From Octopus bimaculoides (lineage: Eukaryota): a stretch of 64,000 nucleotides of DNA. The translations under genes and the position numbers were made by a program. This document shows positions 54,900-55,380 of the stretch, piece by piece. A model generated the notes under the pieces. It did not search any database. It saw only the letters and a program-made list of their open reading frames with translations, and was not told the origin of the DNA. Location: NCBI RefSeq assembly GCF_001194135.2, contig NC_069001.1, positions 34,771,146-34,835,145 on the forward strand. Direction: 5' to 3'. The first letter of the stretch is position 1. The number at the start of each line of letters is the position of its first letter.

Positions 54900-55380
54900 T
54901 TGACAGGTCAACATAACTTTGTATCTCTGTTATTGATTTGTCCACGTAACATTGTATATTTCAATGTTAATGACAGGTCAACATAACATTGTGTCTTCAT
55001 GTTGTTAATTTGTCAACACAGAATTTGTATATTCATAATATTGACACATCAATACAAAACTGTATCTGCATGGTAAAGACATGTCAACATTCCATTATAT
55101 ATTTGTAATATTGACAAGTCAACCTGACACTGTATCGCCATGTTATTGACATGTCAACACAGTATTATAGCTCTATGCTGTTGTGACGACTGGGTTGCAA
55201 TGTAACTCCTTGGTATTGACATGTCAACACATTACTCATACTCTGAACCATTGATATGACAGTGTAACAATGTTATTGACAAGTCAACACAAAATTGTAT
55301 CTCTGTGGTGATGACATGTCAACAGAGCATTATAACTTCATAGCACTGAAATGTCAAGATTACAGCTTAACTCTGTGGCT
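54900..55380. repeat. 14-unit ~35-bp tandem array with palindromic core TTGACATGTCAA
   Basis: Unit starts 54900, 54933, 54970, 55005, 55041, 55076, 55111, 55146, 55181, 55216, 55251, 55276, 55311, 55346. Confidence 0.9.

What the first reader, a model, noticed from the sequence alone, without database searches (positions are those of the whole stretch)
54900..55380. Regularly spaced array of a palindromic 12-mer with diverged linkers
There are 14 units, nine exactly 35 bp and the others 33, 37, 36 and 25 bp (the last unit is taken as 35). The core TTGACATGTCAA(C) is a perfect palindrome. It is exact at 55146 and 55216, GACATGTCAAC at 55076 and 55311, TTGACAAGTCAAC at 55111 and 55276, and TGACAGGTCAAC at 54900 and 54970. 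The ~22-bp linkers are far more diverged, and the period is held even in unit 55181 where the core is lost. Better conservation of core and spacing than of linker suggests selection for a dimeric protein binding at fixed phase (inference). By established motifs, the core contains inverted TGACA half-sites (TALE: Meis/TGIF/Pknox), matches 8/10 of the p53 half-site RRRCWWGYYY including CWWG variants, and yields AGGTCA in two units. Alternatives are a transposon subterminal or internal array, or an ancient minisatellite. It is unique in this window and has the superficial repeat-spacer look of CRISPR without being one.
Basis: partly seen in the sequence, partly recalled or inferred. Interest (0 to 1): 0.7.

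Follow-up and report, generated by a model that had tools for sequence, protein, structure and literature searches.

The report
Decayed 35/70-bp octopus minisatellite
The regularly spaced palindrome array is real, but it looks like an old, decaying non-coding tandem repeat in a repeat-rich stretch of an octopus genome, with only borderline evidence that its palindromic core is protected by selection.

Summary
The array at 54900-55380 is as described: 14 head-to-tail units, nine of them exactly 35 bp, each starting with a variant of TTGACATGTCAAC. The motif is far above chance (10 matches against 0.65 expected) and occurs nowhere else in the window. The linkers are homologous to each other too, so this is a tandem duplication product and not repeat plus unique spacer. 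It is old (mean pairwise unit difference 39%). It cannot code, shows no convincing fold, and has no terminal inverted repeats, transposon protein or second copy in the octopus DNA I could reach. The core is better kept than the linker (17% against 30% mismatch). That is P=0.004 if the core is fixed beforehand. It falls to P=0.08-0.14 once corrected for picking the best block. It is absent within the A subtype, and part of it comes from the A/B split. Only 2 of 14 cores are still perfect palindromes, and no departure is compensated. The p53, TALE and AGGTCA matches are uninformative. Best reading: an ordinary decayed minisatellite. Whether a transposon carried it, and whether relatives conserve it, could not be tested.

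The parts
54900..55380 (.). Whole tandem array: 14 units of about 35 bp, roughly 7 dimers of 70 bp. The 35-bp consensus is TTGACATGTCAACATAACATTGTATCTCTATGGTA.
   Evidence: Unit table; TRF periods 70 and 37; MAFFT alignment of units; nhmmer finds all 14 units and none elsewhere.
55006..55250 (.). Indel-free block of 7 units in exact 35-bp phase. Here the 70-bp period is clearest, with A and B subtypes alternating.
   Evidence: Shift identity 0.50 at 35, 0.61 at 70 and 0.51 at 105. B-type units 55006, 55076, 55146, 55216 and 55311 cluster in the NJ tree.
55146..55158 (.). Intact core TTGACATGTCAAC, with a perfect 12-nt palindrome.
55216..55228 (.). Intact core TTGACATGTCAAC, the second and last perfect palindrome.
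55181..55215 (.). Unit whose core is lost (TTGTGACGACTG) while its linker still matches the A type. Phase is kept.
   Evidence: 6 of 12 core positions changed.
55251..55275 (.). Truncated 25-bp unit. An internal deletion breaks the A/B alternation here: A(partial)-A-B-A.

Best explanation
This is an old, non-coding minisatellite in an octopus genome.

A 35-bp unit that began with the 12-nt palindrome TTGACATGTCAA was duplicated. The two copies drifted into subtypes A and B. The resulting 70-bp dimer was then amplified head to tail to about seven copies by replication slippage or unequal exchange. Later segmental duplications and a deletion occurred inside the array. Since then it has decayed mostly by point substitution, about 0.25-0.3 changes per site.

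It has no demonstrated function. The palindrome is an inherited part of the founding unit and not a maintained binding site. Its somewhat better preservation is partly the A/B split and partly chance or weak constraint.

Shown: tandem origin, dimer structure, age, non-coding nature and uniqueness within the DNA examined. Inferred: the slippage or unequal-exchange mechanism and neutrality.
For: - Tandem head-to-tail units are homologous over their whole length, linker included. Linker columns A19, T21, T23, A24, T27, T31 and T34 are kept in 11-13 of 14 units (TRF).
- The 70-bp period is stronger than the 35-bp and 105-bp ones, and B units cluster in the tree.
- Internal segmental copies exist: 55039-55129 matches 55274-55364 at 74%, and 54899-54930 matches 55275-55306 at 87.5%.
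- Mean pairwise unit difference is 39%.
- Only 2 of 14 cores are perfect palindromes, and there are no compensated changes.
- The longest ORF touching the array is 53 aa. The TGA inside the core stops every frame about every 105 nt (direct reading).
- Hairpin energies are -0.5 to -5 kcal/mol with z mostly above -2.
- There is no Rfam match at gathering score and no tRNA.
- There are no flanking inverted repeats other than microsatellites and no Pfam domain within about 3 kb.
- There is no other unit in the window or in 62 kb of Octopus bimaculoides DNA.
- The setting is AT-rich and gap-ridden. About 45% of it is repeats that match elsewhere in the window or in an Octopus bimaculoides locus at up to 93%.
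- Nine of 13 intervals at exactly 35 bp is about what 0.25-0.3 substitutions per site predicts, given roughly one indel per 20 substitutions. This is my estimate and inference; no selection on spacing is needed.
Against: - The core is nominally better kept than the linker: 17% against 30% mismatch, Fisher P=0.0016, tree-based neutral simulation P=0.0036 for a pre-defined core. Within B-type units the contrast is strong (12% against 31%, P=0.001).
- A founding unit that starts with a perfect 12-nt palindrome is itself unusual.
- Neutrality was not tested against other species.
- Genome-wide copy number is unknown.
Confidence: 0.62

Rival explanations
1. The array is the internal or subterminal tandem-repeat region of a transposable element, autonomous or not, whose other parts have decayed beyond recognition or lie outside what I could compare. 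It arrived by transposition and did not arise in place.
For: - The window is packed with mobile elements: two SINE types, a mariner remnant (HTH_48, E=1.4e-7) and other dispersed repeats.
- Internal minisatellites are common in transposons, including MITE- or Helitron-linked satellites of molluscs (my own knowledge).
- In an unrelated metagenome, a 36-bp tandem repeat with the identical 13-mer sits next to a flank conserved between two contigs, L058 and L061. That shows such arrays can be carried by dispersed elements.
Against: - There are no terminal inverted repeats or long terminal repeats around the array.
- There is no transposon protein domain within about 3 kb.
- Neither flank recurs in the window or in L169 apart from low-complexity matches.
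- The SINE downstream starts at 55430-55433 in all its copies, 50 bp beyond the array.
- There is no second array in about 126 kb of octopus DNA.
- L058 and L061 share nothing with the window beyond the 13-mer.
Confidence: 0.22
2. This is a functional phased array of binding sites. A dimeric sequence-specific factor binds the half-sites TTGAC/GTCAA in each unit. The cluster acts as an enhancer, silencer or insulator, as the 12 Su(Hw) sites of the gypsy insulator do. The factor might be a TALE or p53-family protein, or one of the many octopus C2H2 zinc-finger proteins.
For: - The core is better kept than the linker.
- The two centre positions vary (ACATGT, ACAAGT, ACAGGT) while the arms are kept, as expected if the spacer is not contacted.
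- The phase is kept across a unit that lost its core.
Against: - The excess is not significant after correction for block choice (P=0.075-0.14) and is absent in A-type units.
- Only 5 of 14 units keep both TTGAC and GTCAA, and conservation is asymmetric (C5 9/14 against G8 13/14).
- 35 bp is 3.3 helical turns, so neighbouring sites face different sides of the helix (inference).
- The p53 rule of two decamers 0-13 bp apart is not met, and half-sites of equal quality occur 4.8 times per kb in the window.
- The known TALE palindrome has a 2-bp spacer that this core lacks (my own knowledge).
- There is no recognisable gene or exon nearby.
Confidence: 0.08
3. This is a structure-forming element. 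Each palindrome extrudes as a hairpin or cruciform, or the transcript folds into small-RNA precursor hairpins.
For: - There is a 12-nt palindrome.
- In three units the symmetry extends into the linker, for example CAATGTTA...TAACATTG around 54970.
- There are two weak miRNA-model matches inside the array.
Against: - Fold energies are -0.5 to -5 kcal/mol, and only 4 of 14 units reach z below -2.
- No change in one arm is compensated in the other.
- The Rfam matches score 18-20 bits against gathering scores of 70-83, with E about 0.9.
Confidence: 0.03

Closest known systems
Minisatellite (VNTR) with a dimeric higher-order repeat
   Same: - Head-to-tail units of 10-100 bp.
- Whole-unit homology.
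- A 70-bp period stronger than the 35-bp one.
- Internal segmental duplications and a deletion.
- Non-coding and embedded among microsatellites and SINEs.
   Different: - It is very decayed (39% pairwise difference), so it is probably no longer being homogenised.
- The unit opens with a perfect 12-nt palindrome.
- Copy-number polymorphism, the usual hallmark, could not be examined.
Tandem arrays inside transposable elements, such as mollusc MITE- or Helitron-associated satellites (my own knowledge)
   Same: - A short array of a few hundred bp in a transposon-rich region.
- A similar 36-bp array with the same 13-mer is carried by a dispersed element in metagenome contigs L058 and L061.
   Different: - No element ends, target duplication, coding remnant or second copy were found here.
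- The mollusc examples I recall have units of about 150-170 bp, not 35.
Arrays of protein-binding sites: gypsy insulator (12 Su(Hw) sites in about 350 bp) and EBV oriP family of repeats (20 x 30 bp, palindromic EBNA1 sites) (my own knowledge)
   Same: Anatomy only: a dozen or so evenly spaced short cores separated by AT-rich, less conserved linkers. In oriP the core is palindromic and binds a dimer.
   Different: - No binding protein, function or selective constraint has been shown.
- Half of the cores are damaged.
- There is no viral or retrotransposon context.
CRISPR array
   Same: A regular alternation of a conserved short segment and a more variable one, with a period of about 35 bp.
   Different: - The host is eukaryotic.
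- The 'repeat' is 12-13 bp, not 23-55 bp.
- The 'spacers' are homologous to one another.
- There are no cas genes.
p53-family response element
   Same: GACATGTC is a good central part of one RRRCWWGYYY decamer.
   Different: - There is one half-site per unit, matching 8/10.
- Neighbouring half-sites are 25 bp apart, not 0-13 bp.
- Only 6 of 14 units qualify.
- There are 298 equally good half-sites in the window.

Membership tests
Minisatellite / tandem repeat | Head-to-tail copies of a 10-100 bp unit, detectable by a tandem-repeat finder. | tested here: met
   TRF period 70 (score 207, 72% matches) and period 37. There are 14 units with 9 of 13 intervals at exactly 35 bp.
Minisatellite / tandem repeat | Units are homologous over their whole length, not only at a short core. 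| tested here: met
   Seven of 22 linker columns are kept in at least 12 of 14 units. nhmmer finds 12 of 14 units at E<0.02.
Minisatellite / tandem repeat | Copy-number variation between individuals. | not testable with these tools
   No population data or second assembly of this locus could be reached.
Higher-order (dimeric) repeat | Identity at twice the monomer period exceeds that at one and three periods, and subtypes alternate. | tested here: met
   Identity is 0.61 at 70, against 0.50 at 35 and 0.51 at 105. B units cluster in the NJ tree.
Transposon-internal or subterminal array | Several dispersed copies that share the array and its flanks. | tested here: inconclusive
   No second copy of the unit or flanks in the 64-kb window or in the 62 kb of non-N sequence in L169. 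The whole genome could not be searched.
Transposon-internal or subterminal array | Element ends (terminal inverted repeats or LTRs, target-site duplication) or a transposon protein nearby. | tested here: not met
   The only inverted repeats are microsatellites. No Pfam family was found in ORFs within about 3 kb.
CRISPR array | Near-identical repeats of 23-55 bp separated by unrelated spacers, in a prokaryote, usually with cas genes. | tested here: not met
   The conserved part is 12-13 bp. The linkers are homologous to each other. The window shares SINEs with Octopus bimaculoides. No protein domains lie nearby.
p53-family response element | Two RRRCWWGYYY decamers separated by 0-13 bp. | tested here: not met
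   Six units hold one decamer at 8-9/10, and the next lies 25 bp away. The window holds 298 such decamers.
TALE (MEIS/TGIF) palindromic site | TGACAGSTGTCA, that is inverted TGACA half-sites with a 2-bp spacer (my own knowledge of SELEX motifs). | tested here: not met
   No unit contains it. In the core the half-sites abut (TGACATGTCA) (direct reading). TGACA alone occurs 2.7 times per kb in the window.
Nuclear-receptor element | AGGTCA half-sites in a defined paired arrangement. | tested here: not met
   AGGTCA occurs in 2 units only, created by a T-to-G change at the palindrome centre, and is absent from the consensus.
Structured RNA or hairpin element | A stable fold beyond shuffled controls, with compensatory changes. 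| tested here: not met
   Energies are -0.5 to -5 kcal/mol. There are no compensated pairs. Nothing reaches an Rfam gathering score.
Selected protein-binding array (gypsy insulator or oriP FR type) | Core columns evolve more slowly than linker columns beyond neutral expectation. | tested here: inconclusive
   P=0.0036 for a pre-defined core. P=0.075 (simulation) and 0.14 (permutation) after correction for block choice. Not significant within A-type units.
Selected protein-binding array (gypsy insulator or oriP FR type) | A known factor binds the core, and the array has a measurable regulatory effect. | not testable with these tools
   No binding or chromatin data were available. The motif appears in no paper in the library.

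The most novel reading that the evidence does not exclude
The array is a maintained platform of up to 14 sites for a dimeric DNA-binding factor that recognises TTGAC-N2-GTCAA. It would be an insulator- or silencer-like element peculiar to octopods, possibly bound by one of their expanded C2H2 zinc-finger proteins and possibly spread by a transposon. The borderline excess conservation of the core would be the trace of that constraint.
Probability: 0.07. Interest if true: 0.55.

Novelty: new member of a known kind. Interest (0 to 1): 0.12.

Why it matters
As it stands it matters little. It is one more decayed tandem repeat in a genome known to be full of repeats. Its main value is as a caution. 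'Conserved core, diverged spacer, fixed phase' can arise from a dimeric higher-order repeat plus the choice of the best-looking block. It would matter if the core proved to be constrained across octopod species or bound by a factor. Cis-regulatory elements and transposon-control sites of cephalopods are almost unknown. A 14-site phased array would then be an easy handle for finding the protein that reads it.

Tried and rejected
- **CRISPR:** rejected. The linkers are homologous, the core is 12-13 bp, and the context is eukaryotic.
- **Coding repeat:** rejected. ORFs are at most 53 aa and the core contains TGA.
- **tRNA or known RNA family:** none found.
- **Hairpin or cruciform:** weak energies and no compensation.
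- **Part of the neighbouring SINE:** rejected. All copies of that SINE start at 55430-55433.
- **Flanking inverted repeats:** only microsatellites.
- **Nearby protein domains:** none within about 3 kb. The only domain in the window is a mariner HTH at 35.2 kb.
- **Pattern scans of metagenome, prokaryotic-genome and viral collections** for two cores 33-37 bp apart. They returned about 15 unrelated tandem repeats, coding repeats and single chance pairs. L058 and L061 share the exact 13-mer and a 36-bp period, but nothing else aligns. With about 15 arrays recovered, one carrying the three extra bases is expected by chance about one time in five (my estimate).
- **Exact-protein look-ups** of five small ORFs on and around the array: none on record.
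- **Protein search with a SINE-derived ORF:** one hit, in Octopus bimaculoides. The protein collections therefore hold almost no octopus non-coding ORFs, so I ran no further search on array ORFs.
- **Literature:** the motif appears in no paper, and nothing relevant came up on octopus or cephalopod minisatellites or satellites.
- **Search for an exon in the window**, to reach the orthologous intron in other species: 75 non-repetitive ORFs inspected, none convincing. Not pursued.

Full report
**What is there**

Window 54900-55380 holds 14 consecutive units.
- TTGACATGTCAA is exact at 55146 and 55216, and the listed variants sit where stated.
- TTGACANGTCAAC with at most one mismatch occurs 10 times, all within the array. 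Shuffles give 0.65 on average and never more than 3.
- A profile built from the units recovers all 14 and nothing else in 64 kb.
- Tandem Repeats Finder reports the region with period 70 (72% matches, score 207) and period 37.

The array is a dimeric higher-order repeat.
- In the indel-free block 55006-55250, self-identity is 50% at a shift of 35. It is 61% at 70, 51% at 105 and 46% at 140, against a background of 27%.
- Units alternate between an A type (linker ...ACATTGTATCTCCGTGGTA) and a B type (...GCATTATATCTCTATAATA). Five B units form one clade in a neighbour-joining tree.
- The alternation is broken once, at the truncated 25-bp unit 55251.
- There are longer internal copies: 55039-55129 matches 55274-55364 at 74%, and 54899-54930 matches 55275-55306 at 87.5%.

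The linkers are homologous to each other. Seven of 22 linker columns are kept in at least 12 of 14 units, as well as the better core columns. This is therefore a product of tandem duplication and not a repeat-spacer architecture.

**Age and state**

- Mean pairwise difference between units is 39%, and mean mismatch to consensus is 25%.
- Copies of the main SINE in the same window differ from one another by about 18-26%. The array is therefore at least as old as that SINE burst (inference).
- Only two cores are still perfect palindromes.
- Five units keep both TTGAC and GTCAA.
- Every departure from symmetry is one-sided, with no compensated pair.

**Core against linker**

Mismatch to the 35-bp consensus is 31/181 (17%) in columns 1-13 and 89/296 (30%) in the rest, Fisher P=0.0016.
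- The observed difference is reached in 0.36% of runs if the core columns are fixed beforehand.
- The best 13-column block of a simulated array does as well in 7.5% of runs.
- Permuting columns gives 14%.
- Within A-type units the contrast disappears (21% against 24%). Within B-type units it is strong (12% against 31%, P=0.001).
- Seven of the eight consensus differences between A and B are in the linker. Part of the apparent linker divergence is one old split copied along the array.

Conservation inside the core is not symmetric. C5 is kept in 9 units and its partner G8 in 13. My reading is that there is a modest, borderline excess, and that it falls short of evidence for selection.

**Spacing**

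Nine of 13 intervals are exactly 35 bp. With about 0.25-0.3 substitutions per site and roughly one indel per 20 substitutions (my estimate), about 60-65% of 35-bp units would escape any indel. That is close to what is seen. Keeping the phase across the unit that lost its core needs no selection either, because that unit changed by substitution. Also, 35 bp is 3.3 helical turns, so neighbouring cores do not face the same side of the helix (inference).

**What it is not**

- **Not coding.** The longest ORF touching the array is 53 aa. The core carries TGA, which falls in frame in every third unit on either strand (direct reading).
- **Not a known RNA.** There is no tRNA and no Rfam family at gathering score in the window. 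Only chance-level matches appear in a permissive scan.
- **Not a convincing hairpin.** Fold energies are -0.5 to -5 kcal/mol, and z is below -2 in 4 of 14 units.
- **Not CRISPR,** for the reasons given above.
- **Not a specific transcription-factor site.**
  - Decamers matching RRRCWWGYYY at 8/10 or better with an intact CWWG occur 298 times in the window (4.8 per kb).
  - Only six units have one, and none has a partner within 13 bp.
  - TGACA occurs 2.7 times per kb in the window.
  - AGGTCA appears only in the two units where the centre T became G.

**Surroundings**

- The window is AT-rich (24-40% G+C) and has ten N gaps.
- It is crowded with microsatellites.
- About 45% of it matches elsewhere in the window or in locus L169.
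- An ORF through one SINE copy hits a single database protein, 'uncharacterized protein LOC106868243 [Octopus bimaculoides]'.
- The genomic locus of that protein (L169, GCA_001194135.2) shares many dispersed repeats with the window at 80-93% identity.

The window therefore comes from Octopus bimaculoides or a close relative.

On the left the array abuts 114 bp of unique sequence and then a long imperfect (ATC)n tract (54262-54786). On the right lie a 45-bp TG/TA-rich stretch and a tRNA-like SINE. All copies of that SINE begin at 55430-55433, so the array is not part of it. There are no flanking inverted repeats apart from microsatellites. There is no Pfam domain in ORFs within about 3 kb. The only domain in the window is a mariner HTH at 35218-35367. 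No convincing exon was found.

**Relatives elsewhere**

None of the sequence collections on hand holds cephalopod genomes. Scans for two cores 33-37 bp apart returned unrelated tandem repeats, coding repeats and chance pairs.

One case is worth recording. Metagenome contigs L058 and L061 carry a 36-bp tandem repeat, TTGACATGTCAACAGGACTGTTGTGTGCAGCATATC, with the identical 13-mer. A flank is conserved between the two contigs, so it is a dispersed element of some other animal. Nothing beyond the 13-mer aligns with the window. About 15 arrays were fished out by the 10 specified bases, so one that also matches the three extra bases is not surprising. I treat it as coincidence.

L169 adds 62 kb of octopus DNA without a single unit. 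Exact look-ups of five small ORFs around the array found nothing. The motif appears in no paper in the library, and I found no description of an octopus minisatellite of this kind.

**Verdict**

The best-supported reading is an ordinary, old, decaying minisatellite. It was built as a 35-bp unit, then a 70-bp dimer, then about seven dimers, and now drifts (confidence about 0.6).
- A transposon origin of the array remains open (about 0.2), because the genome could not be searched.
- A maintained array of binding sites for a dimeric factor is not excluded (about 0.08). It rests only on a borderline statistic and on an anatomy that tandem duplication explains by itself.

Searching the whole genome and aligning the locus across octopods would settle both questions. 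No step had to be referred.

Noticed in passing
window 56388-56600, 41431-41589, 22648-22810, 57985-58137, 4783-4949, 29506-29719 and others: An abundant SINE-like dispersed repeat with at least 12 copies at 74-82% identity. An ORF through one copy matches only 'uncharacterized protein LOC106868243 [Octopus bimaculoides]' at 80% identity, so that gene model is probably repeat-derived.
   Followed up: partly
window 55430-55610 (+); also 14577-14625; L169 40934-41020, 39801-39901, 69791-69985: A second, tRNA-like SINE type with a B-box-like GGTTTCGATTCC. It starts 50 bp downstream of the array. ARAGORN and Rfam do not call it a tRNA.
   Followed up: partly
window 34792-35367 (-): A mariner-type transposon remnant. 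The ORF at 35218-35367 matches HTH_48 (Mos1 transposase HTH) at E=1.4e-7, above the Pfam cut-off.
   Followed up: partly
window 45046-45780; L169 53160-53933: A 735-bp dispersed repeat, 80% identical between the window and the O. bimaculoides locus. Its ORFs look like a Tc1/mariner transposase core by eye, but Pfam finds nothing at E<=0.1.
   Followed up: partly
window 55705-55926 and 43099-43320: A 222-bp stretch is 95% identical between the two places. The first copy ends at the N gap 55927-56301. This is a recent duplication, a young repeat, or an assembly effect.
   Followed up: no
window 1030-1567, 8663-8947, 12830-13096, 54262-54786: Four long (250-540 bp) imperfect (ATC)n/(TGA)n tracts, about 67-71% alike. 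One lies 114 bp upstream of the array. They may be a repeat family and not independent microsatellites.
   Followed up: no
L058 2033-2540 and L061 1213-1472 (metagenome contigs Ga0123353_10193453, Ga0123357_10335109): A well-preserved 36-bp tandem repeat with the identical 13-mer TTGACATGTCAAC. A flank is homologous between the two contigs. Downstream is a stretch whose translation resembles the C-terminal motif of insect non-LTR retrotransposon proteins, by my own reading. It belongs to a dispersed element of an unidentified animal.
   Followed up: partly
L105 800-1100 (metagenome contig): A cluster of nested palindromes built on GTAACAGAGTTGACATGTCAACTCTGTTAC. It matches on both strands and has irregular spacing.
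   Followed up: no
L054 1104-3608 (metagenome contig Ga0209149_1045696): More than 2.5 kb of a satellite with a period of about 35-37 bp (CAGACATGTCAACTACAGACATCGTCTATGTACAA) and several unit variants. It shares only GACATGTCAAC with the window.
   Followed up: no
window 4952-5125, 10846-11220, 20885-21297, 25750-25978, 28812-29063, 31574-31583, 40399-40475, 55927-56301, 60615-60713, 61914-61923: Ten runs of N, so the window is a draft scaffold. The nearest gap is 547 bp downstream of the array. The array itself is in uninterrupted sequence.
   Followed up: yes
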